A stretch of 64,000 nt of DNA from NCBI GenBank assembly GCA_964106645.2, contig OZ067051.1. One strand, given 5' to 3'. The position numbers and the translations under genes are program-made. This DNA is from Podarcis pityusensis (lineage: Eukaryota). The notes under the pieces are model-generated. The model ran no database searches. It was given only the letters and a program-made list of their open reading frames with translations, and was not told the origin of the DNA. Below, piece by piece: positions 1,968 to 27,340 of the stretch. The first letter of the stretch is position 1. Every line of letters starts with the position of its first letter.

Positions 1968-2697
1968 TTTTATTTATATCCCGCCCTCGCCAACCGAAGC
2001 CGGGCTCAGAGCGGCTAACAACAGTAAAATGATACAACATTCTAAAATCATTTCATTATAAAATTAATTCAAATCAGATTAATGGCAACCATTGGGCTAG
2101 AGTTCTGTGAGGATTGCCAAAGGAGGGAGTCAGGCTGTGCCCTGGCCAAAGGCCTGGTGGAACAGCTCTGTCTTGCAGGCCCTGAAGAAAGATGTCAAGT
2201 CCCGCAGGGCCCTAGTCTCTTGTGACAGAGCATTCCACCAGATCAGAGCCACAGCTGAAAAAGCCCTGGCTCTGGTTGAGGCCAGCCTAACCTCTCTGTG
2301 GCCTGGGACCTCCAAGATGTTTTTGTTTGAAGACTGTAAGTTCCTCTGTGGGACATATCAGGAGAGGCGGTCCCGTAGGTACGAGGGTCCTAGGCCGTAT
2401 AGGGCTTTAAAGGTTAAAACCAGCACCTTAAACCTGATCCTGTACTCCACCGGGAGCCAGTGCAGCTGGTATAGCACCAGGTGAATGTGATCTCGCACCG
2501 AGGACCGCGTAAGGAGTCTCGCTGCCGCATTCTGCACCCACTGGAGTTTCTGGGTCAGTCTCAAGGGCAGCCCCACGTAGAGTGAGTTACAATAATCCAG
2601 TCTGGAGGTGACTGTCGCATGGATCACAGTGGCTAGGTCAGGATGAGAGAGGTAAGGCGCCAACTACTTAGCTTGGCGGAGATAAAAAAATGCCGCC
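1937..2697 (-). mobile_element. L2-clade LINE, 5'-truncated 3' fragment
   Basis: ORF2 C-terminal motifs VTSRLDYCNSLY...VQNAAARL...LHWLPVEYRIRFK. Ends in a simple (TTA)n tail at 1937-1965. Confidence 0.85.
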
Positions 2698-3949: not shown

Positions 3950-5120
3950 TGGCGCAGCTGCAGGACACGAGCGTTCTGAAAGGCGCCGGCTGTGATTGGC
4001 CGTGTTCATAACAGGGGGCGGAGCACGCTCAGGACCCTCCTCCCTCCCTGCTCTCCTGTGTTGGTAAACGTTCTCCCTCAGACCCACGTGGCTTTGCGAG
4101 AGACGACCGCATGGCTCTTGCGCCCCGCGGCTTCCTGGGAACTGTAGTTCCTCGCCCCTCCCGCTTTCCTATAAGCTCCCTCCCAACTCGTTCACAACGT
4201 GACTACATTTCCCATGCGTAGCCGCGAGGGAAGGGGAGCCCGACCTCTCCCGCTAAACGCCGCCGCGCGAAGCACTCTGGGGCTTGTGGTTCGAGCGCGG
4301 AGCGGGAACCTTTCCCGCTTTTTTTTTTTAATAATCCTCCCTTTCCCTGCCCCGCCTCTCCCCTCCGAATGGGAGCAAGCTCACCTCTCCAACCCGCCCC
4401 CACCCTACAGAGGACTACGTTTCCCAGCAGGCCTCGGGACCCTTCCCCCCTCCTTCCCTCCCCCTTCGCCTCACCGCGCGCGCCCTTCCCTTCCCTCCCC
4501 CGCCCCCGCCTTCACTTTTGGCGGAGACATTTCCGAAGCGAGTCTCTCCAAGATGGCGGCATGGGGAAGGAGGCGCGCGGGCCCCGGCAGCTCCAGCGGA
4601 GGCGGCGCCGGCGCGAGGGAGAGGTGAGCGGCGGAGGCCCGGCTGGCTGCCCGGCGGCCTCCTCCCCGCCCCCGGCTCCCGGCCTTCACGCCCTGGGCCT
4701 AGGGGAGCCGAGGGCTGCTTCTCCCCTCACGCCCCCCTCAGGCCCCTCAGCTTCTCGGAGGCCTCCTCTTGGCCTTGCAGGGGACGAAGCGGGGGCCAGG
4801 CCTCGAGACTCGCCAACGGCGGCGAAGGCAGCTTCCGGGGCGCCTCTGTGGGACGGGAGAGCCGGGAAGGAGGGTGCGGGTTGGCCTTTGGGATAAGGGA
4901 GGGGATGGCCGGCTGGGAAGGAAGAGTGCTGCTAAAGGATTGCCCGAAGAAGCGGGGGGTGCCGAGGTCATTGGGTTTAGGAGGCAGGAGGGGTCGCTCC
5001 GGGGTTGGGGGGGCTAGAGGGGTGGCAGAGGCGAGGGAGGGGAAACGAGGCTTCGGCCTGTGCGGCACAAGGCCTTGGCATAAGTAGAACGAGGGGGCCA
5101 TCCTCGGGAGAAGCCAGGGG
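3950..5120 (+). promoter_or_regulatory. TMEM11 CpG-island promoter with three ZNF143/THAP11-type ACTAC..TCCCA motifs, an E-box and a YY1 motif
   Basis: GC/CpG-rich. Motifs at 4136-4148 (reverse), 4202-4214 and 4414-4426; CACGTG at 4085-4090; CAAGATGGCGGC (YY1 consensus) over the start codon. Confidence 0.75.
4553..4623 (+). CDS. TMEM11: TMEM11 coding exon 1 (transmembrane protein 11, mitochondrial)
   Basis: ATG at 4553 in aagATGG context encodes MAAWGRRRAGPGSSSGGGAGARE(R), matching the TMEM11 N-terminus. The AG|GTGAG donor at 4624 is phase 2 and joins exon 2 in frame. Confidence 0.96.
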
Positions 5121-6129
5121 CAGGAGGAGTTGGGGGCTGCAGGAGTTCATCCTTGGGGGAAAGGGGAGGGGAAGAATGGGGGGCGCAGGGAGTGGGGCGA
5201 GAGGGTGGGCACGGGATGGATTAGGGGTTGCAGGGCTCCTGGAGGAGGTGCTGCCGAAAGAGAGGTCAAACGAATGTGTGTGTGTGATATGGGGGGGGGG
5301 GGCCGCTGGAGGCACCAACGTGTGAAGCTTCTGTGAGCGAGGAGGAATCCAGTTGCCTCACGAGGTCTGGGTTCGGGGTGGGGGAAAGGTCGTGGCTCCA
5401 TCAGGCTGTGGGAAAAGTAGGTATCCCCTCACCGCAGCTTGGAGAGGGAGGGGCATCAGGCCTGTGGCAAGGGAAGGTCAGTACACAAAGTCCCTTAACT
5501 TAACTCCGGGCGTGTTTCACTCATCCCAGATGTTAGACCCGGAGGTGACAAGAGTAGCTTCTGCTTAGACTAAGAATATTCTTGGATGCTCTTAAAATCT
5601 ATTTTTGAAGGCCGCAAATGCTCCCCCAAAGTCCTCTGAGAGTGACCTCTTGGTGCACAGCTGTTCTTGTTGGTTGAGTGATTTATGTTTTTAGGTGTTG
5701 CATTGTTATGGATTCGGAAGGTTAGGGAGCTGGTGGGGTGGAATTAAGCTGGTGGCTCCTGGCTGTGGCAGTTTCACCCCCTTTGGCCATCAGCTCTCAC
5801 TTTACCTCTATGTAGATAATGGTAGGAGGTAAAACAAAGAATATTTACATAGTTTTCTTGTGGGGTTTCTCCCATTGCTCAAATTAACCCCAAAAGTTTT
5901 AACATATTGTATTTTTAGTTTTGAAGTTCAGTCTTTCGTTGTAAATATTCCCACTTTTAAGGGTAAGCTTCTAAAAGATCGGTATTTGCAACTCTCAGTT
6001 GAAACTATTGCTGTGTAACTCCTAATTATAATTTTGCATCCCAGTTTCAATGGTTTCAGCAAACTTCCCTAACTTCAGTTGTTGCTTGTTGCATTCTCTC
6101 CCATGAAGGCAGAATGAGGATTTTTTAGT

Positions 6130-6346
6130 TACAGATAGGTAGCCGTGTTGGTCTGCCATAGTCAAAATAAAAAAAATCCTTCCAGTAGCACCTTTAAGAC
6201 CAACTAAGTTAGTTCTTGGTATGAGCTTTCGTGTGCAAGCACACTTCTGTGTATCTGAAGAAGTGTGCTTGCACACGAAAGCTCATACCAAGAACTAACT
6301 TAGTTGGTCTTAAAGGTGCTACTGGAAGGATTTTTTTTATTTTGAC
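6130..6346. mobile_element. Penelope-like element remnant forming an 89-bp perfect inverted repeat
   Basis: Arms 6160-6248 and 6259-6347 are exact reverse complements. The sequence resembles reptile PLE termini (gaagaagtg...cacgaaagctca...gtcttaaaggtgctac; gtagccgtgttggtctg). 15-bp TSD TGAGGATTTTTTAGT at 6115-6129 and 6347-6361. Confidence 0.8.
6251..6288 (+). ncRNA. Minimal type I hammerhead ribozyme motif (Penelope-type)
   Basis: GUAU-CUGAAGA-A-GUGUG(CUUG)CACAC-GAAA-GC-UC^AUAC: conserved core, stem II, stem I GUAU/AUAC, and palindromic AGCU in place of helix III. Confidence 0.7.
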
Positions 6347-9300
6347 TGAGGATTTTTTAGTAATGGTTAGGGCATTTTAGACTACAGTGGAGAAAGGCAC
6401 AATTCTTCTGAAGTATCAATGAAAAGATAAATACTTTCAGCTTTATGTTAAAATGGTTGAAGCCAATAAGGAATAGATGAAATGAGCTCTTCCGTTGAAA
6501 AAGAGTTTAAGACTTCTAAGTCAATGTAATAAGAAAGTTACCCATATTGAGCGGAGTGTTTGTGAATATGCTAGAGCAGTTAGAACCTGGACCAATCATG
6601 TTTAAGGCAGTTAGAGGCAACTGGGTAAAGAAATGTTCTGTGTTGCATGTGAAGTCTGCAGAAGTGTTTTTCTGAGAGTCTGTTGCTTGGGAAGCTGATA
6701 TAGTCCAAAACTGCTGGAAGGAATCAAGTTGGGGAATGCTGACTTAAACAATGGTTATGCATTGGCTGCAAACAAGTGTGTGAAACTATGGTTTGAATAG
6801 CAAATCTTGGGATTGCGCTAACCAGGGTTAAGTTTTAATCTGCAGCGACAAACTGGTAAAAGCAGGTTCTTTGTGCCTTTGCTTGGAGGATTAGAAGCTG
6901 GGCTTATTGGCACCTATACCTGCTCTCCAGAGACTGGGTTTAGCCCAACCAGCATCATTGTATGACTGAGTTCTCGATCAGAGTGAAGTCAACAAATCCC
7001 AGCGGGAACTAACCATAGCTAAGTGTTATGTCTGCCATAGGTAATTGGAAAACAGTGTATGCTGGTTGGTAATGTGGCTCATAACAGGAGTTGAGTAATA
7101 TTCCTGTTTTTGTAAACAAGTAGATCATACCCAGAGTAGACCCATTTAAAAATGGTCATAACTAACTATTACTTACTTTGATGCAACCCATGGTAGGGAT
7201 GATGGGTGTAGTTTTAACCCCTGTTTACATGCAGCTGACTCAAGAAATGTTCCAGTTCTTTGTTTCTGGCTGAAATAATTATTAACCCCTTGTATTATGG
7301 CTTCTACCCTTCTCTCCATTGAGAAGCTGGAAATGTATATGTCTGTTTTCTGCCCATCTTTTTTCAGTGTCCCCTTCTGAGTAACATCTGTGTGACTTTG
7401 GCTGCCAGGAATGTGTTTTGGACGCAGAACAGATCTAGTGTTCATCAAGTAACCACAGAATACGTGCAGCTTTCATGGTAGATGTATTTCCCTTCATTTG
7501 TCAGTAGGTTATACCTGCTTCCTGCTTCTTGGATTTCCCATCAATGAGCTTTTTTAAAAATATGCTTTCAGGCTATTTTGATGCTAGGCAGTTAGCTTAA
7601 AAGGGAGTCTTGTTGACATGAGAGGGTTAATGTTGGGTGAATGACTAATGAATAAAATATTGTCTGGCATGATGGAATATGGTCAAATTTAATAATATAG
7701 CAGATACCTCAAACCAGTCAGAGGCATCTCTTTGAGTTAGAATTCCAGTAAATTGTCTGTTCAGATGCTGCTCTTTGACAGGCTGCCTCTTATATTATGA
7801 TGTTTGACTGTGGTTGAAATACTAATGAAGGCATGGGGCCTACTTTTTAGCTACATCACGCTGTCAGCTTTTTAGGGCTTCTCCCCTTCCCAGCTTTACA
7901 GGGGTAGTAGAGCACTTACTGCGCATGCAGAAGATCCCAGAATCAATATCCAGCATCTCCAGGTATGAGTTGGGGAAGTCTCTTGTCTGTAATCCTGGAG
8001 AGATGCTGCCAGTTAGACAGTACTGAACTAGATTGATAAACGGTCTGACTTTGTATACAACAGATTGCTCGTTAGGGGCAGGTAACCACTGACAACTTCA
8101 ACCAGCTGCTATTTCTCCATCTCATCCCTCACCCTCATCATGATCTGGGGATAATAGACTACATCAGTTAGAGCAGTAATGGTTTCTTTAGATCAAGCAT
8201 TGGTCCACATTCCCTCAATGGGCACCTTTCCAGGGATCACATGCCACAGGAAGAGGCTGAGGATGGATGGAACTTTCTCCATTGTATAGCAGGCTTCATT
8301 CCAGTCAGGTTTCTACATACACTTCCCTCTCCATTCAGGGAAGCAAGGGCATTAGCACAGTTCAAGGGCGCATTCCAACCAAGCCAGGAGCATTCAAGAA
8401 AGTGCTGAGCAAGGCTAGGGAGGGGACGCAGCCTGGAAGAACCAATACAGGGGCCTGAGGTTCCCCACCTTTGGATTACGTAGTGTCATCGGCATATCTG
8501 GTACAGTATTCAGCCAAAATATATAAGTGCATTTGGGACAGATACCTACAGTCAAAGAAGAAGGAGGGAGGAATGTTGGCAAATGCAGTTTAATGTCTTA
8601 AACCTTTGTTATAGTTAGGAATGAGGATTAAAGGAGTAATCCAAATACTATGCAGAAGATATGGGTTTTGCAGAGGAGAGTGGAGGCACCACATTTGCTT
8701 GGGGTGGGAATTCCATGCCAAGGATGGAATAAAAAATGACCAGTCTTGGAAGTACTTGGAATGTTCAAAAGTGTTTATGTGTTAAGTGTTATGTGTAGTA
8801 CAAGCTTGTGTACTAATAGTGAACTTAATTCTCCGAGCAATGATCCTTATGAAACCAAAATGGCATCATTCACACACAAGATGGAGGTATTGGCAGCCTT
8901 TTATTAGATTTATACAATGCAACTTCCTCCAAAGGAGCGTATGGCAGCAAACATATCAATACTAAATACAAATAAAACTTGTAGAAACAGTTTGGAACAA
9001 CCTTCTGAAAACCAGTTTAAAATGCCTAAAAGCAATTGTCTGCTCTCAAACTAATAATTTCAGGATTGCCAGGGACATGACTTTCAGTCATCAAAAGCCT
9101 GACTAAATAATGTTTTGAAATTTCTCTTAAAAATTAATAGTGAGGGAGACAGATGTGCCTCATTAGGGGGGCATTCCACAAACATGGGGCACGCCACTGG
9201 CCAGGCACCTCCAAGTGGCTGCAACACCAGCAGGTTCTCCCCTGGTGATTGTATAGACTGAGCACTGTTCAAAATTCACCAGGCGAATTATGAGCGGTCC

Positions 9301-12300
9301 AATTGTGACCATGTGGAGATCTTTGGGTGTTGGTGACCGGCATCTCTATCTGGCTGGTCCCTCCAGCTTTCTTAAGCAGGTAAGCAGAAGAGCTTGCTTA
9401 TTGCTTTTATCTCCCACTTTTTTCTGAAAGGAGTACATGGTTTACCCCCCTTCTCAGCTAATCCCTACAACCACCCCATGAGGTAGGTTAGGAGGCTGTG
9501 ACTGGCCCAAGCTCACTCAGGGAGCATCATGACTGAGTGGGGATTTGAACCCTGATCTCCTAGGTTCTAGGTCCAACACTCTAACCACTGCTCCACACTG
9601 GCTTCCTAAAGTACTTATGCTCTAAGGCAGCTCTACAAATTACATAGGTAAATATGGCGAAAGCCAAATTCATTTAAGAGAAGGATCTGGAATATTTTCC
9701 TTGAAGCTTGAATTTGTTATGTTCTGGATTGTTTTATTTGATGTTTTAATGTGTTGTAAACTGCTTTGACATTTTTTTCCTTTAAAATATAAAGTGGTAT
9801 AGAAATGAAATTAATAACAATAATTAATCCCATTGCAAAAAAGGGCACCTAGACACTCCATTGTGACACTATAACCTAGGTTTAAGGTGCTATTTGGCAA
9901 TTAGCTTGTGTATCAATGAGTTTCTAACGCTGGGCCTGAGATGGCTGGTACTGTTTTAAAAAACCGAAAAGACAGAGCGGGGAGTCTGCAAGGTGGGTCC
10001 CATGAGGAAAGGACATGCGCAGTGGCCATAGAGCACTTATTAATATCGGAGGGGTGGAGGTGAAAACTGGGTGGGAAGAATAGGGTGGAGGAATAATCCA
10101 CTGCAGCATTTTGTTGCAACCTCCACTTGTTCCATCTGTTTCAGATATTCAGGCAGTGAGAGTGCCGTCGCATATATAGCCAGAGCGGTACCATCCACAA
10201 GGCAGAGGGAGGTGTCAGCAGGCTCGGAGGAACCTTGAGGTTTGCAGAAGTACAATAAACATTTAGAGAAACTAGCAATTTACTGTGATTATATGATCCT
10301 GTGATTGTTTTCTTGTGTGAAACACTAGGCGCACATTCAGCTGTGTGACTCTTCAAGTTGATCAAACACAGTGGACAACCTACTTTTATTCAGCTCTGAA
10401 GTTTTGGCTTTTCCATTCTGAGTGAAAATCTGCTGGGCCACTTCACATGCGTTGCTGTCCTTTCTTTTGTTTCATGTGCCCCTCTTCAACGCTCTCTTGA
10501 GCATGGCTTTGCATCAGGGGGCTGATATTAATGGTAATACCTAGACTACACTACAGTGTGTGTGGTTAGGCGTTCTGGGGTGGGCATCCTCTCCATTCAG
10601 CTCTGATCTCCAGTTACTGCCCTGTTGTTGCAGCTCTGAGGTTTCCCCAGCAATCTTGTCAAACCATGTACAGCCTTGGTGGTACTGAATTCTTTAACCA
10701 TGGTTAGCATTGAAAGAGTTTGATACACATAACACATGCTTGTCTTCGGCTGTGCCAGAAAGTGCTGACCCTAGCGATTAGACTTGGGACAAAGTGATCC
10801 AAGACCCCTACGGTGTGCGGCTCTTGGTATTTAATGGCATTTGAAAGATCATGCAATTATTCGGATGTACCCTTCTATACTTGACACACCATGTGACGTA
10901 AACTTTGCCAGTCGGCAGTGCAAGAATTCCTCTACTTCCAAGAACCACTTCTTTGTCCTCGTTTGATTTAAATAACATTTTATTTCATTTCTTAATAACT
11001 GACACGGAGAGAATTTGATATAAAAAATTGTCCAAAAGGCATTCAGAAATGCTTGCACTCTACAATGTTTATGGTAGTACTTTGGTTTTGGTATTCCCCT
11101 CCAAGGCATCTCTTGAACCTAGGCTTCTGTCATTTAGGTGCTGGGTTAAAACTGTATTTTTACTGTGGCTTTTAATTGAATTATGACCTGCCTTTTTTTA
11201 ACAGGCTGCTGGTTTTCATTGGCACAACTTTTTATTATTTTTATGACCTGCGTTTCAACTTTATATTGTAAGCTGCTTTGAGCATATTTGATGGAAAGGT
11301 GAGATAGAATGTGGATTGTCAACTGATTGTTTAGTTGGTCTGCTGTGCAAATCACCAGTTGATTATTAAATGGGGATGTTACAGGTACCTCATATATGTG
11401 CCTTTTGTGACACAGAAGGTGTAAAAGTGTAAAGCTGTAAAGCAGTAGTTTAAAAACTGCTGCTCATTGTTGGGACGGAAGGTCATCTTAGCATTTCCGT
11501 TCATTGCCTATTACAGGAAGGCACGAAAATGACATCAGAGAACAAACATGTGCCTTTAGCTTGCATTGCAGTGGATTAAAATTTGCCCCCCACCAATTAA
11601 CTAAAGGATTAGTTGAGTGATCAACCAATTACAGCTTGCAGCAGTACTATGTATGCGTGTGAATGTATGTGAGGTTTTCAAATTCCTATGCAGCTGAATG
11701 CAGGAATTTCTCCCGCTGTGGGTGTGTATACATTAAAGCTTGCAGTCTTGAAACATACATTTTTGCTATTGCTAGATCTTCCCTCTCCTGCCCCTGCCCC
11801 CCGACCCCCTGCTGGGCTGTCTCAAATGTATGAAGAGGCAATCCTGTCCCAGCTGTAGGTTTATTTGTGCTGTACTTTATATGCAGGGTTCAGACTTAAT
11901 CTCGGGGTTCTTGGGTGACAAGTGTACAGACTTTCATCTTCAATGTATTGAAGCCCATGGGTTTTCGCAACTGGTGAATGCAGTGTTGTTGTTTTAAAAG
12001 GAATTCCTAATGAGGCTGTCACATGATGGATAGCCTCTATGGATTTCTCTACACGCTTCTCGAGATTCTAATCCTTGCTCTGATTTAGAGAGAGAATTGG
12101 GTGTGCTGAGCTTTTTTGCAACAGTGCTAAAATTTGCACCCCTCCCAGTGTCATCGGTGGGAACGTTATTCCAGGCAGACGCTAAACAAACTCCACACCA
12201 TACAAAGCTTCCCTTTGTTTTGGATGAGAGGGTCTAGAAAAAGAATGTGTAGAGTACACAGCTGCTCCAAAGCTTTGTTCCATCCCATTTTGAACAAAGG

Positions 12301-14983
12301 TGTCCTTTGGCTATGTGGTCTGGAAAAAGCTTTCTCCTGCCGTGGTGGCTTTAAAATGGGCTAAGTTGATCTGCGTCTCAAGCACAATACTAGCAGGGTG
12401 CTTCAATCCCTGCTTGTTATAGAAAGAGGAGAGTACGTTTTAAAGTCCCTCTTCAAGAGATTGCTATTTACTGGCTTTTTGTTCAGAATAAATCCTAAAG
12501 AGGAGATGGGGGATGTGGCAGTCATATTCCTGGTCTTCAAAACTGAGGTAGCTTTTAAAAGAGTCTACCCCCGTCCAAGTCAAGTAAACAAGATTGCTCC
12601 TTGAATCTTGTTTTGCATGGTGTACCTCACCGCAGCATCAAAAGTTTTAAAATTTCAAAGCAGCTTGAAATGTTTTGTCCAAATTGACTGATAGCCATTT
12701 TGCAGTGGGCTTTTCTTGGCTTCCCAGGAGGGAATGTGGAAACTATTTCAATAGCACCCCCCCCCCCACAAGCACTTTTTGATTTAGTGTGTATTGATCT
12801 GCCCTGCTGATGTTCTCAGACATGCTTTCAGTAGCATCCAATATCTTAATCCTTGCTCATAGTCTGCTAATGAATACAGCAGTGTGTCCTGTTCTGGTTG
12901 ATGACCTCTTAATGTTGCCTCTCTTGCTGCTTGTGTTTCTGGAGTTCCGCTTTTACATTTGCTTTGGACCTTGCATATTGTGATTGGGAACTGGTTTTGC
13001 GAATACGCATTAGGAAGGCCATCAAGGTGTATCAATTGTGGCTGTTCCTTTGAAACACGTGGGAGCAACAACAGGGAAATGACTGGATCTCCTTACCATG
13101 TATCTTGAAGGGGGAGGAGCCGTAGCCTTGTACATCTGGGGCAGAACAATCTAACCATAGGAGTCCAGTGTCATTTATGCAAGGGTAAAATCTGCCCGAA
13201 TGCTCCTTTTTTGAGACTAGTTCCAGCTGAGCTGGGTTGGATGATGGACTGGTGCATCTCTGACTGAGCTGGAATGAGGGGCTTTACCTAGCTGAGCCCT
13301 GACTCAATTGGAGATCCACCTATTCCAAACTCTTGGCAGATCAGATATTGGGTTTGGATTGCTCCCGAAATGTATCTAAATGTGGGGAATCACTTCCCTA
13401 ATGCAAAATATATGTATGTTCAAGTCATTACACTAGTTCAATTCAACAGGACCTGCAGGAGAGCTGGCTGTGGCCACCCACCCACAGTGAGACAAGTAGA
13501 ATAAAACAGCAAAATGTTCATAGTAGAACACTGAAAGGGAGCAGGGAATGTGGTGCAGTATGGCATTGGTAGCACTGTTTTGCGTGTTGGGAGTGAACCA
13601 AAGAGGATCTCCCCTTCATTTATTTGTCTTCCTCTAGTCACAGACCCGTGAAGGATCCATAAGCAAAACTGCAAAGTACTGCTGGTTCAGAAAATGTTCT
13701 GAATTTCTAAACTTGAAAGAGGTAGGATCTGTTTTCCCTCCCAGGCCCATTAATTTCTAGTGTGAGTATGGATTGGTTAATTTCCAAGCTCCATGTAGCT
13801 AAATGGTCCCACTCTCCAGGTTGGTGTTTTGGAAACCTTCCTCAGGAAAGCTTTTTGCCTTCAGAAACTGGCCTCTGAAAAAGTAGGTACACTTTGCTTG
13901 CAGGAACAGTCCTGTGATGTTAATTCTTAATGTCAGCGGCCACCTTCAGACTTTGGCCAGTTATACTGATAACACACACTGCTTTATATCATTGGAAAAC
14001 GTGGTCAGTTTTGAGGAAAATAAATAAAAGGATGAAGCTGTTCTCAAGGGAGGGAAAGACAGTAAAAGTCAAGATCTGGTTGCCACTACTTGAGGGTCTG
14101 AAAGTGTTGTTTTGTGTAGTGTCCAGTACCAATCCCATGATCTTTATCATCACCAAAAGCAACACCAAACTTTTTTGTGTGAGATTTCTAAACTGCCCTT
14201 CATCAAGGGGATCCCAGGAACTCAATATGGAAAATTGTCTGGAAAGGAGCTCAGCCAGACCCTGATATGGTGACCTGCCATCATTTTTGAAGCATTTGGT
14301 GCAGAAGTTCCTATCTAGCCCATGTGATTAAGGAATAAAGTTTGAAAACATGTGGCTAGTGCCTGCTGTGAAGGCTTAGTTACCAAAGGGATTTTTGGAC
14401 AAGTCTTCCCATCGTAACAGGTTTCTGTACTATGACGAGTCTCCCAAATCAGTTGATAATTTTCATGCGCTCATGTAACCTGGCCCTCTAATGCCTGAGT
14501 TCATGTTGGAACAAGGCTAGGAATATTGTGACTCAAACAAATTTTGTATGGGTGTCCTTAAATTCGGAGCACAAGATGTTGATGTCCTCAGTGCACTATA
14601 ACAGTAAAATAAGAAGTGCAGAACAACAGGTTTATGACCACCAAGTAAATAAGACCTGAACTGCTACTAGGCTAGTAAAAAAAAGTGAGTGTATGTGGTT
14701 TCTATGGGGGAGGGGGTCAGTTCCCTCTCTGCTGGACCACTGTGGGTTGTGCCCCCCCCCCCCCCCCGCTGGTTGTAGAGCCTTTTCATCCTCTGCAGTT
14801 AGTACAGAAACCACGCAGAGGAGGATCAGTCATCCTTCCCTTTACTGCCAGGCTTGCTTGCCTAGAATTCTTAATTTGGCTACAGCCCCTAGGCAAGCTT
14901 ATAGGTTGTACTGATGGGGGGAAGGCAGGGAGCAAGGCCAGTTCACAACCCTCAAGTAACTCACTTGCCTTTTCTTCCGACAG

Positions 14984-15500
14984 GGTCACCTTGTCTGCCA
15001 CGGACTGTTACATTGTTCACGAAATCTACAACGGCGAGAATGCTCAGGACCAGTTTGAATACGAGCTGGAACAGGCCTTAGAGGCTCAGTACAAATACAT
15101 TGTGATTGAGCCCACGCGCATTGGGGACGAGACGGCCCGCTGGATCACTGTTGGGAACTGCCTGCACAAGACGGCCGTGCTAGCGGGCACAGCCTGCCTC
15201 TTCACCCCCCTGGCTGTTCCCGTAGATTATTCCCATTACATCTCTTTGCCTGCTGGCGTCCTCAGCATAGCCTGCTGCACCCTCTATGGGATCTCTTGGC
15301 AATTCGACCCCTGCTGCAAGTACCAAGTGGAGTATAATGCCTATAAACTCTCTCGCCTGCCCCTGCATACACTCACCTCCTCCACTCCCGTGGTTCTGGT
15401 GAGGAAGGACGACCTGCACAGAAAGAGACTGCATAACACGATAGCACTCGCTGCCCTGGTGTACTGTGTAAAGAAGATTTATGAACTTTACGCCGTATGA
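14984..15500 (+). CDS. TMEM11: TMEM11 coding exon 2
   Basis: Acceptor ttttcttccgacag|G, then VTLSATDCYIVHEIYNGENAQDQFEYELEQALEAQYKYIVIEP...KKIYELYAV*, near-identical to vertebrate TMEM11. Total CDS 71+517=588 nt, 195 aa. Confidence 0.97.
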
Positions 15501-18919: not shown

Positions 18920-19238
18920 CTGAAAAGAACAACAAATTACTACCTCCCTCTAGAGATTATTTTCGGTTGGTGGATCCAGGAGGCTCAAGATTACAAATTA
19001 AGCCCATAGATCAAGAGATGTCCAGAGGTGAGACTCTGCAAACAAGTCTGTGACCACTGAACATGGGCTACTAAAGCCACTGAAGATTATCCAACTTCGT
19101 TAAATGTGCTAGTTTTTATATTGGGCCTTTTCAGTCAATGCCAAACTTTGAGAAACCGGGTTTTCCCCTTTCCCTCCACTGGCACTCCCTGTACGCCAAC
19201 AGATACATATAATTTACACAAGCAAAGCTAGTCCTCAC

Positions 19239-19391
19239 CTCCATACTGGGATCCATCTGCCATTACGGAATTAAGTGAGAGATTTGTCTGAATGTAGCCG
19301 GGGCTCACAACTGTGACGTCGATGTCGTACTGCTCCACTTCTGCTCGTAGGCAGTCAAAGAAGGCTTGGGTGGCATGCTTAGAGGCAGCAT
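19239..19391 (-). CDS. DHRS7B: DHRS7B coding exon 6
   Basis: (Y)[38 protein letters not shown]...YG. The catalytic YxxxK forms across the splice junction. 153 nt. Confidence 0.95.
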
Positions 19392-20381
19392 CTAAAAACC
19401 CCGAAGGTGACACAATTTCAGTTGATTTCTGATCTGCAGCTTCCCAGCCAAAATGCATAGCTGCCTTTTGCATGAAGCATGTAACAGTGTAAATAGCTAT
19501 TAGCTACCAGAACTGAATGCAGCCTATTCCAAGGCAGTAGGCTTTTGCTGGGGCAAGCAACAAGGGTGATTATGTCTTGATTCTGCTCTGCTTACAAGAT
19601 TTCCAATGACATCTTGCCAGTGTTGGAGCACACAGGCCCTTGGTCCAGCCCAGGATGGGCAGACTTTAATAGTATGCCAGCTGCTGAACAGCTTCTCATT
19701 AAAGGAAAATTTGGGAATATCATAAAGGGACTGTAAGAATTCAAAACCAAGTTGTAAACTTGCATGAGTCTCTGCAAGGATCTTCATAATCATGTGAAAG
19801 AATTTCTGTTTTAGAGAGGGAAAATTGGAGGTCAGCTCTAATGCGCTCTTTGCTGAATCAAACAGGTTTATTCCAAACAAATGAAGCAAGAGCTTTTGAG
19901 CATGGTGTCTTTTTACAGGCTACGAACAATGGCACTACCCTGTTCCTTTTCCAATTTCTTATTTTAGGATTGGAGGGTTAGATTTCAATATATGCGGAGA
20001 AGTTCCAAGTCTGTTAGGTTAGCATGAATGCTATAATCAGATTCAGCACAACTACCTAGGCAGATTTTGATGGCAAAGTTTGCATTCTTATCGTAAATGT
20101 GATGTAGGGGGAGGAATACCTGGGTAAGGGCAGTGATTATCCAGAATGAAGTTGGGCATTTTGGACCACACAATGCAAGATGTATGCTACCTTCTGGTGA
20201 TGCAGAAGATACCAAAGCACCCCACTAAAATGGGACCCTGCATTGCTGGCACCCGTAGAAATTGAGTTCTTTGTGCAGTAGGACTGGCCCTGTGGAAGTC
20301 ACACCCAGCTCTGGAGACAAGCAAAGATGAAGATAGGGAGAGCAGAAACTATTCTTCCCAATGTTTGAGGTTCGCCTAAGC

Positions 20382-20517
20382 CAGTGTTTCTGAAACTTGA
20401 GTCACCTGCTTTTGCTGGACTACGACTCCCATCATCCCTGACCACTGGTCCTGCTAGCTAGGGATGATGGGAGTTGTAGTCCAACAAGAACAGGAGACCC
20501 GCGTTTGAGAAACACTG
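20382..20517. mobile_element. hAT-like foldback MITE (ggactacaactcccatcatccc family; relatives near 1400, 21300, 24120, 26050, 41480)
   Basis: TIR CAGTGTTTC/GAAACACTG, palindromic body, degenerate 8-bp TSD GCCTAAGC/GCCTGAGG. Confidence 0.7.
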
Positions 20518-20644
20518 GCCTGAGGCTCCCCTCCCTTGAGCTCTATATGTGCTGTATCTACTATAATGTGTTGGCTGCCCCTTTCCGGTGAACTGGTGGT
20601 TCCAGAGCAGCCAACCCTTCCCAAGCCTTGTGAAGAATACTTAC

Positions 20645-20737
20645 AAGCCGAGCGGTAAGGAATGCTAATTTTGCCTTGAACGCTGCTGATGGCGACAATA
20701 TGGCCTTTTCTCCTCTTGATCATGGAAGGCAGAATTG
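20645..20737 (-). CDS. DHRS7B: DHRS7B coding exon 5
   Basis: (A)[30 protein letters not shown], 93 nt, boundaries tag| and |gtaagt. Confidence 0.95.
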
Positions 20738-22018
20738 CTAGAGAGAGGAGGGAGGGGGAGAGAATGAGAATGCAACTCCACAATCTTGCCATGAGAAATA
20801 ATGTGTGCTTCGATCCTGGGAGACCAGGGTTTCTTCCTTATGCTGCTACCTAGAATCGTGTGTGTGTGTGTGTGTGTAAGTGTAACTGTCTTACACAAAT
20901 GTATTTCAACTGCCTAATTTATCCTAGTCACAATTTCTTGGGGATTCCTAGCAGACCTTGAAGTTGCAATATTTGTAGAAATGCTTCCTGAAGAGAGAGG
21001 CAAAATAATCGCACTGGGATCCAAAAGATGACCTTGCAGTTACTTCTTATCCAAGGCAGGAATTGTTCCTACCCTGATGCTGAAAAACTCTATTTGGAAC
21101 AAAGTTCCACTGATTTCAGTGAAAGAAACAAGTCCTTTTTTCTTAAGAAATCTACTTGAACATAAAATAGGATGCACACTGGAGAAGGGTCAGCTGGAAC
21201 AGGTGGGTCCCATTTTTACTTGCCCAGAAACTCAGTAAGGAAGGTGCAAATAAAACTATTGTATCCCTGTATTATATAGACAAGCCTTTCTCAACCTTTG
21301 GTCCCCAGATGCTCTCAAACTGCAACTCACATCATTCCTGTCCACTGGCCATGGTGGCTAAGGGATGAGAGTTGTAGTCCAAAAACATCTAGGGACCCAG
21401 GGCTGAGAAAGGCAGACACAGACTATAAGCAAGGAATGTAAGACTCAGTGGAGCTAGTGGGCCAACGTTTCCACCAAGCAACTGCTGAGGGGCTGCATCT
21501 ACATTTTTCCCACCAGTGTAGTGTATAACAGCCAATTCCGCAGACCTCTTTCAGTTTCCTGCTGCCCTCTAGGATTTTCTCCATGTAGAGAAATGCTACA
21601 AGGGCAGGGAGAGTTGCTTTGAAAGAGGGATCAGCAGCCAAGTTGACTGCCTGATGCTTGCCCGCTTCGCTTTTCTACAAGCTCCTCCAGCTCAGGAAGA
21701 TATTAAAATGGCAAGCAAGGACCATTTTAGCTTGAAAGTAAGCCTATGATTTGTGTCACCATGGTCATTTTCAAGACTGTTACATGAAGCACGTCCCACA
21801 GGCTTTACGAAGACAGCACTTAAGTGGTCTACATAGAATCATAGGATTGTGGAGTTGGAAGGGATCCTGAGGGTCATCTAGTCCAACCCCCTACAATGCA
21901 GGAAGCAAATCTAGAATATTGCAGAGGTGTAACTGCTAAAGAAGTGGGGCACAGTAACCACTGCAGGAAAGGTTAGGATGTGTGCAGAAAGACACAGGAG
22001 GAGGCTGTTACAGTGTAC

Positions 22019-22229
22019 CTTTTGTCAAAGCAATTGGGCCAAAGTAATTGGTTTCCATCACTTTCCTGTCCACTTCCATTAGGGTGTCCACAATTGTGCC
22101 GCGGTAGCTGATTCCAGCATTGTTAATCAAGATGTCCACATGGCCTGCACACTTCAAAATCTCTGCGGCAGCGCCAACGACTGCTTTGATGTCAGCGAGG
22201 TCAAAGACCACAGTGTGGTGTTTATGGGG
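22019..22229 (-). CDS. DHRS7B: DHRS7B coding exon 4
   Basis: [15 protein letters not shown]...[14 protein letters not shown]...[13 protein letters not shown], containing the SDR NNAG motif. Boundaries cag| and |gtacac. Confidence 0.95.
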
Positions 22230-22639
22230 CTGTTGGAAAAGAAAAGAAAAAAGCAGTTAATCGTATCTGAACCTATTCAGCTGCAAGGTTCATCGGGTAG
22301 CCTTGGTGAAACCACTCTCTTCGCCTATCCTCTCTCACAGTGTGATACTGGGAAGATAAAATGGCATTATAAACATGCCATAGGGATCTAGGGAAATGTT
22401 TATAAATCAACGCATGCTCTGGACATTTGAGGGAAGCCCCCTCCCAAAAAAATATTGGGGAGGGGGCAAAGGGCGTGGCACCCCTGCTACCAGCACGTTT
22501 GGAAGGAGCAACTGGCTTATATGGCTTAAAGCAGGGCAAATTCCTGGTTTTTGTTTAGGGTGGGGAGGGGATGGACCTTGGGCAAGGTGCTTTCAGGCCT
22601 AGTTAGCTTTCTCATTAACACACAATACAGAGATATCAA

Positions 22640-22810
22640 GGACCAGGCTTGCAGAAGACATCTGAAGGCAGCCCTGTTCAGGGAAGTTTTTAATGTGTGA
22701 CATTTTAATGTATTTTTAATCTTTGTTGGAAGCTGCCCAGAGTGGCTGGGGAAACCCAGCCAGATAGGCGGGGTACGAATAAATTATTATTGTTGTTGTT
22801 GTTGTTGTTG
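22640..22810 (+). mobile_element. LINE (L2-like) 3' end with (TTG)n tail
   Basis: gaagacatctgaaggcagccctgt...aataaattattattgttg. A reverse-complement copy lies at about 42570-42695. Confidence 0.5.
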
Positions 22811-23272
22811 CAGAGATTGCTGCTCCTCTTGCTGCTTGCTTGCTTGTTCAAAGAACAGATCAGGCAGCAGCAGCAGCAAGGATGGGAGGCACCAGGGATT
22901 GGCAGTGGGACACAGGCTTCAGTGAGCATTCAATGATGCTGAGCCTTGACGCCGACCCTGGCTTTAAAAGGGGGTTAATTTGACCCAGCAGCACACAGAA
23001 ACAAAACACATTGCAACCAACCATGCCCTGCACCCTCTGGACTCTTGCACTGCCAGCAAAACAAAATCCCTGTGTACGTGATGCTGACACAAAAGCCCTG
23101 CAAATGTACTATGTAAAAAAATGACATTTTACTGGCTTCCCCTTTCCACCTCTCTCCCTCTCCACCTCTCCTCTTCCCACAACTCCATAAACCTGTGACC
23201 TGCGTGAAAAGCATCACTGACCTACAGTCTCTCCACCTCCTCCTCTTCCTCCCCCCTCACCCCGTTGCTTAC

Positions 23273-23388
23273 ATTCTTTGGGTGGCCAGCAGCAGTGGAG
23301 AGCTCCTGCAGAAGGTCTTGAAGTCTCTCTCTGCTCCTACCACACAGCACCAGTTCTGACCCAGCGGCATGGAAAGCTTTGGCACATT
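23273..23388 (-). CDS. DHRS7B: DHRS7B coding exon 3
   Basis: Encodes (E)CAKAFHAAGSELVLCGRSRERLQDLLQELSTAAGHPKN with aag| acceptor and |gtaagc donor. Phases are consistent with the flanking exons. Confidence 0.93.
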
Positions 23389-23469
23389 CTTGGCAAAAAA
23401 AGAGAGAGAGAGGGACAGAAAAAAAATGCCTTTACACAACTCTTGTATGACCACACTTGGAATGCTCTT

Positions 23470-23720
23470 TTGGGTGAATGCACTTCGGAAAGGATACTGG
23501 TAGATCTAGAAACAGTGGAGAAAATGGCCAAATGATCAAGATTAAGTTAGAGACTACTTTGGTTAGGAAAAGAAGAACTCAAGTGGGCGGGGGGGGGAAC
23601 AACATGATTGCGATTTACAAAATTATGCATGCTGTATTGTGGAGAAATCATTGTAAAACCCAGGCTCAGCCAATGAAGCTGACTTTGGATCAGTTACGGG
23701 GTGAGCGACCTATAGCACAA
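23470..23720 (+). mobile_element. Degenerate CR1 LINE fragment
   Basis: Resembles the CR1 ORF2 3' region (aaaagaaga...acatgattg.g.tttacaaaattatgcatg). Confidence 0.4.
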
Positions 23721-26700
23721 CAACATCTGAATAGCCACAGATCCCATAATTCTTTATAGACACGTGTTTTGGTACGTATCTGACACTTGGTTTGGCCTCA
23801 GCCCAATTTTATATTTAATTTCTTCATTCAAAGGTTCTGCTGGTAAATGAAAGGGCGTGGTGGTGAATTAAATAAAGCAGAACGCTGAGGGAATCAGACA
23901 TGGATCTATGATCACATTTTAGATTCGGCATTTCAGTGAAATAGAATTGCCGTGAGAGAGACTGGTTTGTCAAAGGGCGCCCAGTAAAATTTATGGCCGA
24001 GCAGGGATTTGAACACTGATCTCCTCGGCAGAAGACCTTTATCCAGCATACTGCACTGTATCGCTGCTACTGCAGAACATAATTCCCCTTTATGTGCATG
24101 GGGTGCGGAGCCTTCTTTCTACAACTCCCATCTTCCCTGACCACTGGATAGGCTGCCTAGAGCTGACTGAGAATTGCAGTCCAAAACATTGAGGGGAGGG
24201 ACCAAGTTGGGGAAGGCTCCTTGAACCTGTTCGACCATTGAATGGCCTCAAAAACAGTCAGTGCTCCAACGCTCTTGAAACTACTTGGGCATGAGCAACA
24301 CAAGACTGGTCTGGTGTCCATGGCAGGCCCAGAAGGCTGCACCACGAGAATGGGCCTTTGCGGTGGCTCCCTGCTTGTGGGATGTTCTCCCCAGGGAGAC
24401 TCACCTGGCACCCTCGCCACATCTCTTTAAGCACCAGGAGAAAACGCTCCTCTTCTCCCAGGCTAATTAAACCATCTATGGCCTTTTAAACGGTGTGTGT
24501 GTGTGTTAAGGAGGTTATTGGTTTTGTTTGTTATTAGGGTATGTTTTTTTGTGTTTTCATATTGCAAACTGCCCTGTGTTCTTCGGATGAAGGGCAGTAT
24601 AGAGATTTAATAAATAACAATAATGATGATATTCTCCATTTCCTAAGAAGGAAGAGAGAAATATTGTAATGAATAAATCTGCTAGGAGGACTGTTTTGGA
24701 TAAGGGCCACAGGTTCATGATTGAGAACATGTTTTACATGCAGAAGGTCCTAGGGTCAATCGCCAGTGAGCTGGGTTGGGAAAGAACCCCTTCCCTGCCC
24801 TGAGACTTTATAAAACCACTCCCAACAGAGAACAGACAACACTGAAGCCAATGGTGTAAGGCAGTTTCCAAGGTTCAGTCCAACTGTGAGCCCTTTTCAG
24901 TTCTCATTGGGATCCTGTACTAATCTGTCAAACATATTTTGGGGGGCGGGGGAGACGCAGCTCAGTGGCACGGAACTCATTTTCAACAAAGCAGGGCTCA
25001 ATCCCTTTTGTTTCTAATTAAAAGTATCTCAAGCAACAGTAACCCTTCGCGATGGCTGCTCCCAGACTTTGGAACTACCCTCATAGAGAAATCAGACTGG
25101 CTCCCTCCTTGTTGTCCTTCTGCCAGCAGGCGAATACTTTTTTGTTCCAACGGGCTTTTGGGAACTGGTCTTAAGGAAAGGGCTGGTACTGTGATATTTT
25201 TATGGCAATAATCTGTGTGTTTCAATAAATACCCCCATGTTTTTAGCTGTTTCAGTTTTAACTGCCTCGAGTCCCTGTCGAGGAAAAGGGCAGGGGAAAA
25301 ACCAAATAAACAAAATCTGGAGACATAGCCGTGGGACAGATGAACTAGTATACTATAATGCATTAAGGTAGCTCTTCCTTCCCAAGAAGTCACAGCACCT
25401 TGAGGAGAAACCCACGCTCCAAGCTTGTGGTTGGGCCAACGACGAAGCACACAGCTACGATAAGGCAGTGAGGACATTCCGTTCCCAAAGGGCTTTCAAC
25501 GCTGTTCTGCAGAGAACAAGAAAGCACCTCCACCGGGGGCCACGCGTCAGTTGCCGGTGAATTAAGTTACAGAAGGCTGCATAACTGTTTCCCTTTCCCC
25601 ACCCATTTTAAGGACGTTCTCGGCTCATGAGAGAATTGACCGGAGTGGGGTGCCTGAGTTTGAATCACCGGCTGAGACCTGCCTCCAAGCTGGAATAAAA
25701 CTGGTTAGGGCAGGCGTTACCCAACTATGGGGGCAGGTTCCCCATGGGAGTGACTGAAAATGCCATGGATTGAGAAAGTCCTCCCCACCAGGGAAGGTTT
25801 AGCATTGCTAGGTACTTTTCACAGGCCCCATGACTCATAGAACCAATAGCAGGCGTGGGGAACCTTTGGATGTTGCTAAACTACCACTCCCATAATCCCT
25901 GGCAATTGGCCATGCTCGCTGAGATTGATGAAAGTTGAAGTATGTATAGAGTGACTTGGGGCAAATCAAGCTGGCAGGTGGCTGGGATTTCACCAGCACT
26001 GCACTTTGCAGGGCACCTAGTCTTCCAGTCACCAAATTAAAGCAGGGTTTCCAGGTGTTTTTGGACTACAACGCCCATCATCCCTGACCACTGGTCCTGC
26101 TAGCTAGGGATGATGGGATTTGTAGTCCAACAACAGCAGGAGACCCAAGTTTAGGAAACCTTGCAGTAAAGTTTTACCCAAAAAGCAGGACAGGGGATCT
26201 GAGGCCCAGCAAAGAAGACCTGGAGTCTGGGGGTCCTGATTCACCTCATGCCCTTGCCAATGCATGCTCTTGCGCTTCCAATAAATTAACAAGGCGATGG
26301 AGATGGGGAACAAAGTAGCAGGCAATAAGTCGGAACAGACTTCTGGCTGGTCCTTAATGTTTCTGGGATGGAGCCACCTTCCATCCCAGAAACATTAAGG
26401 ACCAGCCAGAAGGGCTAAATGATGAGGTCTTTCTGTATCTTGTGGAATTCTCTATTGTTTTACTTAAGCCATGTGTTCTTTGTGAAGCAGCTATTGTTCT
26501 GGTGTTCTGCTTGCTGTGTGTGCGTATATGGAGTTTGGTGCTGCTTTGGGATTCACATTGCCACTAAGAAGCAAAGGTTGCCATGTTGACCCATACGAAA
26601 AATTCCCAAACACAGAAAAGGGCCACGTCTTTATAAGGCCAATCAAAATGGCGCAAGAGACTGAGGGAGCTTCTGAGTTTTCCAAGCCTTGGGCAGGTTA

Positions 26701-27167
26701 AGCAAAGTGGGGAAAGATAGAGAAAAAAACAGGCTGGTGTTACAGCCCTAAAATCTGAATTGGTACATATTTAAATTGAGTGTGAGTAAACTAGCAAATT
26801 TAACAAATTAGATGCAATGCAGGTTTTGGGTTTCATCTAGGGATGAGGACATGCACAATGGCCAAGTCCCCATTTTTTGAACATTTGTAAAATCCAGAAG
26901 TTCTGTTGTGACTTGCCTCCCACCTGCTCAACCTGTATATTTGCTAAGAGATGCTACTGAAGAATAAAATTAAAAAACCAAGACTCCTCAGGTTCCCTCC
27001 TCCTTCACAAGGAATCTGATCCTGTAAGGCTAAGCTTGACCTTCGTGGTGTGAGATGAGAGTTTAGTAACACCCTATTTCCCGAGAAAACATTTTGAGTA
27101 ATGTACAAGCTGTCCTGTACAGGCTGTTCTCCTCTCCACCTCCATGCCAAATGTCTCAGAAACCTAC

Positions 27168-27340
27168 CTTTCCCTAGTCCAGAAGTTGCTCCTGTGATCA
27201 CCACCACTGCATCCTTCAGGTAGGCTCTCACACGCATTCTCTGAAGCAGCCGGAAGAGCCCAAAAACCCCCAGGCTGCCAAAAAGCAGTGGAAGAATCAT
27301 CACAGAGGTGAGATCCATCACTTTTCTTCTAGGGTTCGTC
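27168..27340 (-). CDS. DHRS7B: DHRS7B coding exon 2
   Basis: ctccag|G acceptor. Encodes [33 protein letters not shown]...[13 protein letters not shown] (TM anchor plus SDR TGxxxGxG motif). Donor G|gtaggt. Confidence 0.95.

What the first reader, a model, noticed from the sequence alone, without database searches (positions are those of the whole stretch)
6130..6361. Hammerhead ribozyme hidden in a perfect Penelope-like palindrome in TMEM11 intron 1
Seen in the sequence: an insertion with a 15-bp TSD and an 89-bp perfect inverted repeat. On the TMEM11 sense strand, 6251-6288 reads GUAU CUGAAGA A GUGUG-CUUG-CACAC GAAA GC UC^AUAC. This has the full hammerhead core, stem II with a CUUG loop, stem I (GUAU/AUAC), an extra A between A9 and G10.1, and the palindrome AGCU replacing helix III. 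The mirror copy on the minus strand has lost CUGA. Established: Penelope-like retroelements carry minimal type I hammerheads that self-cleave as dimers through such palindromes. Inference: the TMEM11 pre-mRNA contains a latent self-cleaving motif whose fold is mutually exclusive with the 89-bp hairpin, because only gtgtatctga stays in the loop. The inverted arm could therefore act as a built-in antisense silencer that makes the intronic insertion tolerable, and it also offers a long dsRNA substrate for ADAR or Dicer. Arm identity and the intact TSD suggest a very recent insertion.
Basis: partly seen in the sequence, partly recalled or inferred. Interest (0 to 1): 0.8.

Follow-up and report, generated by a model that had tools for sequence, protein, structure and literature searches.

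The report
Ordinary palindromic Penelope-like retroelement insertion
A young 217-bp piece of a Penelope-like jumping gene, inserted as two head-to-head truncated copies in the first intron of a lizard TMEM11 gene, carries that transposon class's usual minimal hammerhead motif; both the motif and the palindrome are normal footprints of the class, not a regulatory device.

Summary
Arms 6160-6248 and 6259-6347 are 89 nt and 100% complementary around a 10-nt loop. They are flanked by a 14-15-bp target-site duplication, and the site is 1.5 kb into TMEM11 intron 1 on the sense strand. Positions 6251-6288 (+) meet every published feature of the metazoan Penelope-like-element (PLE) minimal hammerhead. 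My descriptor hits only there in the window and in none of 300 simulated windows. No Rfam hammerhead model matches it.

The insert has the published PLE integration signature: two inverted 5'-truncated 3'-end copies, with a 30-nt "tail" (6130-6159) at one end only. A lizard PLE protein nicks and extends both DNA strands in vitro from two internal start sites, which explains both the palindrome and the one-sided tail.

The silencer idea is not needed. The hairpin does exclude the ribozyme fold, by about 51 kcal/mol. However, single minimal hammerheads do not cleave in vitro, the one characterised lizard PLE hammerhead needs its own protein, and there is no partner motif in cis.

"Very recent" means under roughly 7-14 My.

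The scan has noted many similar PLE hammerhead inserts elsewhere in this genome, several of them palindromic, and two follow-ups reached the same reading. Verdict: already known, low interest.

The parts
6115..6129 (.). Left copy of the target-site duplication (TGAGGATTTTTTAGT)
   Evidence: Identical to 6347-6361.
6130..6159 (-). 30-nt PLE 'tail', present only at this end of the insert. In the element's sense (minus strand) it forms a 6-bp stem with an AACAC loop.
   Evidence: It has no mirror in the right arm. Stem-loop seen in the minus-strand fold. A one-sided 30-40-bp tail is described for PLEs (PMC8557442) and lies between two RT start sites in PAc (PMC11167929).
6160..6248 (-). Left arm: a 5'-truncated copy of the PLE 3' region, sense on the minus strand. 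Its hammerhead lacks C3-A6 and the 5' strand of helix I.
   Evidence: No descriptor hit on the minus strand.
6249..6258 (+). Centre of the palindrome, forming the hairpin loop. These 10 nt belong only to the right copy and supply the 5' strand of helix I plus C3-A6 of the hammerhead core.
6259..6346 (+). Right arm: a 5'-truncated copy of the same PLE 3' region, sense on the + strand (the TMEM11 sense strand). It ends at the tail-less terminus. T6347 may belong to the element or to the TSD.
6251..6288 (+). Minimal type I hammerhead motif. Helix I is 4 bp. Core is CUGAAGA, with an extra A between positions 9 and 10.1. Helix II is 5 bp with G10.1-C11.1 and a CUUG loop. GAAA follows, then the palindrome AGCU in place of helix III. 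The predicted cut is after C6284.
   Evidence: Features match PMC4209133. No Rfam hammerhead hit.
6347..6361 (.). Right copy of the target-site duplication
4554..4623 (+). Context: coding part of TMEM11 exon 1 (MAAWGRRR...), inside a CpG island at about 4000-5500, followed by a gtgagc donor
4624..14983 (+). Context: TMEM11 intron 1, which holds the insertion
   Evidence: Donor. Acceptor ...ccgacag.
14984..15497 (+). Context: coding part of TMEM11 exon 2, covering the whole Mito_morph_reg domain
   Evidence: Pfam PF14972, E 1.4e-75, profile positions 1-159 of 159. Translation.

Best explanation
This is a dead-on-arrival insertion of a Penelope-like retroelement (PLE) in intron 1 of a lizard TMEM11 gene.

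Inferred mechanism: the PLE ribonucleoprotein nicked both strands of an AT-rich target 14-15 bp apart. Each 3' end primed reverse transcription inside the 3' region of the element's RNA. One cDNA started at the distal start site and so includes the 30-nt tail (left end). The other started at the proximal site and has no tail (right end). Both cDNAs stopped within or just upstream of the hammerhead region and were joined head to head. The result is an 89-bp perfect inverted repeat flanked by a target-site duplication.

The hammerhead motif on the + strand is the ordinary minimal ribozyme that metazoan PLEs carry near the junction of their terminal repeat and ORF. At this locus it is almost certainly inert, for three reasons. 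It is buried in the hairpin. It is a monomer without helix III and has no partner in cis. Ribozymes of this type need dimerisation or the element's own protein to cleave.

The palindrome is a by-product of integration, not an adaptation.
For: Shown here:
- Anatomy of the insert.
- Both outer ends are element 3' ends and the 5' ends meet in the centre. This is the geometry expected if both overhanging 3' ends primed (read).
- A one-sided 30-nt extension at 6130-6159.
- A unique, non-chance min-HHR hit.
- A hairpin of -166.7 kcal/mol against -115.7 with the hammerhead enforced. The isolated motif folds into stems I and II at only -6.8.
- No second motif in 64 kb.

From papers:
- PLE insertions are 5'-truncated, often have an adjacent inverted 5'-truncated copy, and often have a 30-40-bp tail at one end only (PMC8557442).
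- The Anolis Poseidon protein PAc cleaves and extends both strands. It starts RT at two internal sites with the tail between them. The main site is +111-118 from the ORF start, which I parse as A9 of its hammerhead. It prefers ATT in AT-rich targets (PMC11167929).
- Counting here from A9 = 6261, the two ends fall at +86 and +116, and an ATT spans the inferred bottom-strand nick.
- Metazoan PLE min-HHRs have a short helix I, a longer helix II, a nucleotide between 9 and 10.1, G10.1-C11.1 and a palindromic 15.2-16.2. They occur in reptiles. Single motifs are inactive and dimers are weak (PMC4209133).
- The PAc hammerhead is protein-assisted.

Leads only: 41 scan notes mention Penelope and hammerhead together, all those shown being from this genome and several of them palindromic. 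Two follow-ups reached the same reading.
Against: - No other copy of the element is in the window. No RT/GIY-YIG ORF is nearby.
- I could not compare the element with Repbase or Dfam, or with the rest of this genome.
- By eye it shares no alignable sequence with the one PLE consensus I could read (Poseidon_Ac). Only the architecture is shared, so the family name is unknown.
- No Rfam hammerhead model matches, even at E<=10 on the isolated 55 nt.
- Twin priming is inferred from the geometry and from in vitro work on a different PLE. It is not shown for this locus.
- Cleavage activity was not measured.
- Reads could not be consulted, so the assembly of the palindrome is unverified.
Confidence: 0.85

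Rival explanations
1. The inverted arm is retained because it acts as an antisense silencer of a self-cleaving ribozyme that would otherwise cut the TMEM11 pre-mRNA. The hairpin also feeds ADAR or Dicer.
For: The hairpin does preclude the hammerhead fold, by about 51 kcal/mol. The intact motif is on the sense strand of TMEM11 intron 1. Long perfect intronic hairpins are plausible ADAR substrates (general knowledge, not tested).
Against: - Inverted copies are a routine integration product of PLEs regardless of location.
- Scan notes report similar palindromes in intergenic DNA and other introns, some with motifs on both strands.
- Single min-HHRs show no cleavage, and the PAc hammerhead needs its protein.
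- There is no partner motif for a dimer within 64 kb.
- Cutting an intron 1.5 kb from the donor is not obviously harmful.
- Zero divergence means there has been little time for selection to act.
Confidence: 0.03
2. Same element and same consequences, but the palindrome arose by snap-back. A single cDNA primed at the left end folded back on itself and was copied. The copy was then joined to the right target end by 1-nt microhomology before it reached the tail.
For: The arms are perfectly identical, as expected if one arm was copied from the other. The loop is short, at 10 nt. The T at 6347 is shared between element and TSD. Reverse transcriptases are known to self-prime hairpins (general knowledge).
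Against: The right end stops exactly 30 nt short of the left end. That is the length of the canonical one-sided PLE tail (30-40 bp) and fits two discrete RT start sites used on both strands. A snap-back copy would have no reason to stop there.
Confidence: 0.1
3. It is a foldback or MITE-type DNA transposon with long terminal inverted repeats, and the hammerhead-like motif is incidental.
For: A near-complete palindrome flanked by a TSD.
Against: - The ends are asymmetric, with 30 nt on the left only.
- The TSD is 14-15 bp, typical of target-primed reverse transcription rather than cut-and-paste families.
- The motif meets all min-HHR features and is absent from 300 simulated windows.
- The distances from the hammerhead to the ends match PAc RT start sites.
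Confidence: 0.02
4. The palindrome is an assembly artefact, such as a chimeric fold-back read, and not real DNA.
For: PLE tandem and inverted structures are known to trouble assemblies. I could not check reads.
Against: The TSD is clean, the loop is a unique 10 nt and the tail is asymmetric. These fit a biological insertion rather than a fold-back read. Scan notes list several similar loci.
Confidence: 0.03

Closest known systems
Minimal hammerhead ribozymes (min-HHR) of metazoan Penelope-like elements (Cervera & De la Pena 2014, PMC4209133)
   Same: CUGANGA/GAAA/UH core. [quoted passage not shown] G10.1-C11.1. Helix II longer than the canonical 4 bp. A 4-bp helix I. No real helix III, but a palindromic tetranucleotide (AGCU) that could pair between two copies. 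The paper also reports 'dual motifs close to each other on opposite strands'.
   Different: Only one of the two inverted copies keeps a complete core. The family sequence differs from the published examples I could read. Activity is untested.
Poseidon_Ac / PAc, the Penelope-like element of Anolis carolinensis (Frangieh et al. 2024, PMC11167929)
   Same: Hammerhead of the same architecture: extra nucleotide after A9 and a palindromic ACGU in place of helix III, as I parse the consensus. Insert ends lie about +86 and +116 from A9, against a main PAc RT start at +111-118. The tail contains an AC-rich stem-loop. The target is AT-rich with ATT at a nick. Extension of both strands explains the inverted copies.
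   Different: No alignable sequence similarity by eye. In PAc the ORF starts at the hammerhead, whereas here that frame hits a stop after 11 codons. This may be a different PLE family or a non-autonomous derivative.
General PLE insertion architecture: pLTR, inverted 5'-truncated copy, one-sided 30-40-bp tail (Craig et al. 2021, PMC8557442)
   Same: 5' truncation, an adjacent inverted copy forming an inverted repeat, and a 30-nt tail at one end only.
   Different: Here both copies are extremely short (88-129 nt), so there is no ORF and no direct pLTR.
L1 twin priming (inversion with 5' truncation)
   Same: Both 3' ends at a staggered break prime on the element's RNA, giving head-to-head pieces within one TSD (general knowledge).
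   Different: L1 twin priming copies different parts of the RNA and gives an inversion/deletion. Here both primings start at defined internal sites of the same 3' region, which produces a true palindrome.
Animal non-LTR retrozymes (Cervera & De la Pena 2020, PMC7229834; bioRxiv 10.64898/2026.07.22.740005)
   Same: Type I hammerheads related to PLEs, and non-coding.
   Different: Retrozymes are direct tandem repeats that yield circular RNAs. This is a single inverted pair with one intact motif.

Membership tests
Metazoan PLE minimal hammerhead (min-HHR, PMC4209133) | Conserved core boxes: C3-U4-G5-A6-N7-G8-A9, G12-A13-A14, A15.1...U16.1-H17 | tested here: met
   CUGAAGA at 6255-6261, GAAA at 6277-6280 and UC at 6283-6284. 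Descriptor hit.
Metazoan PLE minimal hammerhead (min-HHR, PMC4209133) | [quoted passage not shown] | tested here: met
   A6262. Listed as a conserved trait.
Metazoan PLE minimal hammerhead (min-HHR, PMC4209133) | G10.1-C11.1 pair closing a helix II longer than the canonical 4 bp (6-8 bp in the described families) | tested here: met
   G6263-C6276. Helix II is 5 bp with a 4-nt loop. The G10.1-C11.1 pair is met exactly. At 5 bp the helix is longer than canonical but shorter than the 6-8 bp described in PMC4209133.
Metazoan PLE minimal hammerhead (min-HHR, PMC4209133) | No stable helix III; palindromic 15.2-16.2 that allows a dimer | tested here: met
   A-GC-U at 6280-6283 is its own reverse complement.
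Metazoan PLE minimal hammerhead (min-HHR, PMC4209133) | Short helix I (4-5 bp) | tested here: met
   GUAU 6251-6254 pairs with AUAC 6285-6288.
Metazoan PLE minimal hammerhead (min-HHR, PMC4209133) | Family-wide covariation in the helices | not testable with these tools
   There is only one locus in the window.
Metazoan PLE minimal hammerhead (min-HHR, PMC4209133) | Self-cleavage at the predicted site | not testable with these tools
   This needs a bench assay.
Rfam hammerhead families (type I RF00163 and related models) | Covariance-model score at or near the gathering threshold | tested here: not met
   No hammerhead family at E<=10 on 701 nt or on the isolated 55 nt. Nothing at gathering threshold in the whole window. 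This is expected for motifs without helix III, which needed a special descriptor.
Endonuclease-positive Penelope-like element insertion | 5'-truncated copy with an adjacent inverted 5'-truncated copy | tested here: met
   Feature defined.
Endonuclease-positive Penelope-like element insertion | 30-40-bp tail present at one end only | tested here: met
   6130-6159, 30 nt, with no counterpart on the right. Feature defined.
Endonuclease-positive Penelope-like element insertion | Target-site duplication from staggered nicks in AT-rich DNA | tested here: met
   A 14-15-bp TSD that is 67% A+T.
Endonuclease-positive Penelope-like element insertion | Sequence identity to the 3' region/pLTR of an element encoding RT and a GIY-YIG endonuclease | not testable with these tools
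   There is no such ORF in the window, and no Repbase, Dfam or host genome is available. Poseidon_Ac is not alignable by eye.
Animal non-LTR retrozyme | Direct tandem repeats, each with a complete hammerhead | tested here: not met
   The copies are inverted and only one motif is complete.
MITE / foldback DNA transposon | Symmetric terminal inverted repeats reaching both ends, and a short family-specific TSD | tested here: not met
   The left end has 30 unmatched nt and the TSD is 14-15 bp.
microRNA precursor | Match to a curated miRNA family at its gathering score | tested here: not met
   The best hit is MIR1222 at 56 bits against a threshold of 90. Both strands score equally, which makes it a generic hairpin match.

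The most novel reading that the evidence does not exclude
Palindromic PLE insertions might be preferentially tolerated in the sense orientation of introns. The hairpin could mask the element's ribozyme and its AATAAA signal. Alternatively, the 89-bp perfect intronic dsRNA could be edited or diced and so measurably change TMEM11 expression in this lizard.
Probability: 0.03. Interest if true: 0.45.

Novelty: already known. Interest (0 to 1): 0.1.

Why it matters
It matters little as a discovery. The locus is a clean in vivo example of what the PAc in vitro work predicts. In a single insertion both DNA strands appear to have primed, one from each of the two internal RT start sites, which gives a palindrome with a one-sided tail. 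Loci like this are useful in three ways:
- as markers of ongoing PLE activity in a lizard genome;
- as presence/absence polymorphisms;
- as a warning for annotation, because perfect palindromes with ribozyme motifs in introns or near promoters of this genome are transposon footprints.

Tried and rejected
- **Rfam.** Three runs gave no hammerhead family: 701 nt, E<=10; 55 nt, E<=10; whole window at gathering threshold. The only hits were sub-threshold miRNA-type hairpin matches scoring equally on both strands. I rejected these as generic.
- **Other copies in the window.** Exact and 3-mismatch patterns and blastn with word size 7 found none, not even diverged ones.
- **Sequencing runs.** There was therefore no read support, no polymorphism check, no RNA-seq and no copy-number estimate.
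- **Poseidon_Ac consensus**. I compared it by eye only. The architecture is alike but the sequence is not. No computed alignment exists.
- **PMC522041** (Penelope EN/RT biochemistry) is not held.
- **Pfam on ORFs crossing the insert** (window:6025-6282:-) found nothing.
- **miRNA, MITE, retrozyme and assembly-artefact readings** were considered and rejected or down-weighted. See the rival explanations and the membership table.
Full report
**Observation**

The stretch is as described.
- The repeat finder gives arms 6160-6248 and 6259-6347. They are 89 nt and 100% complementary, with 10 nt between them.
- The 15-mer TGAGGATTTTTTAGT stands at 6115-6129 and again at 6347-6361.
- T6347 is both the last arm base and the first TSD base. 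The duplication is therefore 14-15 bp, with 1 nt of junction ambiguity.
- The insert is 6130-6346 (217 bp).
The left end carries 30 extra bases (6130-6159) that have no mirror on the right.

**Gene context**

TMEM11 intron 1 and the sense strand are confirmed.
- A CpG island lies at about 4000-5500.
- It contains an ATG at 4554 opening MAAWGRRR..., followed by a gtgagc donor at 4624.
- A cag acceptor precedes 14984.
- The downstream frame reads RVTLSATDCYIVHEIY... to the C-terminus.
- That frame matches Pfam PF14972 (Mito_morph_reg) over the whole profile at E 1.4e-75.

The insert therefore sits 1.5 kb into a 10.4-kb first intron, with the intact motif on the sense strand.

**The motif**

On the + strand, 6251-6288 has these features:
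- a 4-bp helix I;
- the core box CUGAAGA;
- one unpaired A;
- a 5-bp helix II closed by G-C, with a CUUG loop;
- GAAA;
- the self-complementary AGCU in place of helix III;
- C6284 as the predicted cleavage nucleotide.

I wrote a descriptor with these constraints. It hit once in the window, at this position, and in none of 300 first-order Markov simulations of the window.

The minus-strand copy begins at AGAAG, preceded by ACAC. It lacks C3-A6 and the 5' strand of helix I.

No Rfam hammerhead model reports the motif. This holds at E<=10 on 701 nt, on the isolated 55 nt, and at gathering thresholds on the whole window. The only Rfam hits are sub-threshold miRNA-type hairpins that score equally on both strands.

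That absence is expected. Cervera and De la Pena (PMC4209133) needed a dedicated descriptor to find the minimal hammerheads of metazoan Penelope-like elements. The traits they list as emerging beyond the descriptor are exactly those seen here:
- a nucleotide between 9 and 10.1;
- G10.1-C11.1;
- palindromic 15.2-16.2;
- a short helix I and a longer helix II.

They also report such motifs in reptiles, often as single truncated copies or as pairs on opposite strands.

**What the insert is**

Read in the sense of the hammerhead, both outer ends of the insert are element 3' ends, and the two 5' ends meet in the centre. The left copy is 30 nt longer at its 3' end.

Craig et al. (PMC8557442) describe PLE insertions as follows:
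- they are strongly 5'-truncated;
- they often have an inverted 5'-truncated copy immediately adjacent;
- they often have a 30-40-bp tail at one end only.

Frangieh et al. (PMC11167929) studied the Anolis Poseidon protein PAc and report that:
- it cleaves and extends both DNA strands;
- it starts reverse transcription at two internal RNA sites, with the tail between them;
- the main start is in an AC-rich stem-loop 111-118 nt from the ORF start;
- it prefers ATT in AT-rich DNA.

By my parse of the consensus, the PAc ORF start is A9 of its hammerhead. Counting from A9 = 6261 here gives these correspondences:
- The tail-less end is at +86 and the tailed end at +116.
- The tail folds into a 6-bp stem with an AACAC loop.
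- An ATT spans the inferred bottom-strand nick.

Sequence similarity to Poseidon_Ac is not apparent by eye, so this is probably another PLE family or a non-autonomous derivative.

Scan notes on the same lizard genome list 41 Penelope/hammerhead observations. They include perfect palindromes in other introns and in intergenic DNA, and short TSD-flanked solo copies. Two follow-ups reached the same reading. These are leads, not evidence, but they fit an abundant and recently active family.

**Mechanism** (inferred)

- Staggered nicks 14-15 bp apart left two 3' overhangs.
- Each overhang primed on PLE RNA, one at the distal start site and one at the proximal site.
- Both cDNAs ended in or just upstream of the hammerhead region.
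- They were joined head to head, and repair produced the TSD.

A snap-back variant is possible, in which one cDNA is copied back on itself. It does not explain why the right end stops exactly one tail-length short.

**Does the ribozyme matter here?**

ViennaRNA gives -166.7 kcal/mol for the + strand transcript of the insert, as an uninterrupted hairpin. With hammerhead stems I and II enforced it gives -115.7. The isolated motif adopts stems I and II at only -6.8.

No silencer is needed, however:
- Single min-HHRs gave no detectable cleavage, and dimers gave only weak cleavage.
- The PAc hammerhead cleaved only in the presence of PAc protein, and no RNA-seq reads ended at its cut site.
- No second motif exists within 64 kb to form a dimer in cis.

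The inverted arm is explained by the integration chemistry and occurs irrespective of gene context. The ADAR/Dicer suggestion is generic to any long intronic hairpin and could not be tested.

**Age**

There are no differences in 89 arm pairs plus 15 TSD pairs. This gives a 95% upper bound of about 0.029 differences per pair. Assuming a neutral rate of 1-2 x 10^-9 per site per year, and ignoring gene conversion between the arms, the insertion is younger than roughly 7-14 My. It is likely much younger. The one CpG in each arm and the one in the tail are intact.

**Limits**

The palindrome is therefore not verified in reads, and expression, editing and polymorphism are unknown.
- The family's name, copy number, consensus and autonomous partner remain undetermined here.

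**Verdict**

The PLE and hammerhead identification is supported. The silencer interpretation is not supported. This is an ordinary, already-described kind of transposon footprint.

Noticed in passing
window 6166-6171 (+): A canonical AATAAA stands in the left arm, in the sense orientation of TMEM11 intron 1. It would be sequestered in the hairpin. Whether it causes premature polyadenylation is unknown.
   Followed up: no
window 6130-6240 (minus strand, element sense): One frame of the element's sense strand stays open from helix II through the tail (about 38 codons). It includes an ATG in the tail in an A-3/G+4 context (MADQHGYLSV). In PAc the ORF starts at the hammerhead, so this might be the start of the family's ORF, or it might be chance.
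   Followed up: no
window 19231-27390 (-): Short-chain dehydrogenase exons (Pfam adh_short on 20457-20837 and 22011-22256) are convergent with TMEM11. By eye they look like DHRS7B, which matches the TMEM11-DHRS7B-USP22 gene order I recall for mammals.
   Followed up: partly
window 47000-49500, and N run 49711-49910: A second CpG island holds a + strand frame reading ...[21 protein letters not shown]..., which I take by eye for USP22 exon 1 (no Pfam hit). A 200-N assembly gap lies just downstream.
   Followed up: no
window 57423-57842 (-): A 140-aa open frame rich in Gly/Ala (…GVPVIAALGGAAGLAVATIAVPVALGAAGF…). It fits the other first-stage note of an IFI27/ISG12-like retrocopy in a Sauria SINE.
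   Followed up: no
window 40832-41284 (-) and 2361-2663 (-): LINE reverse-transcriptase fragments. By eye the first looks RTE/BovB-like and the second L2-like, which is consistent with a squamate genome.
   Followed up: no
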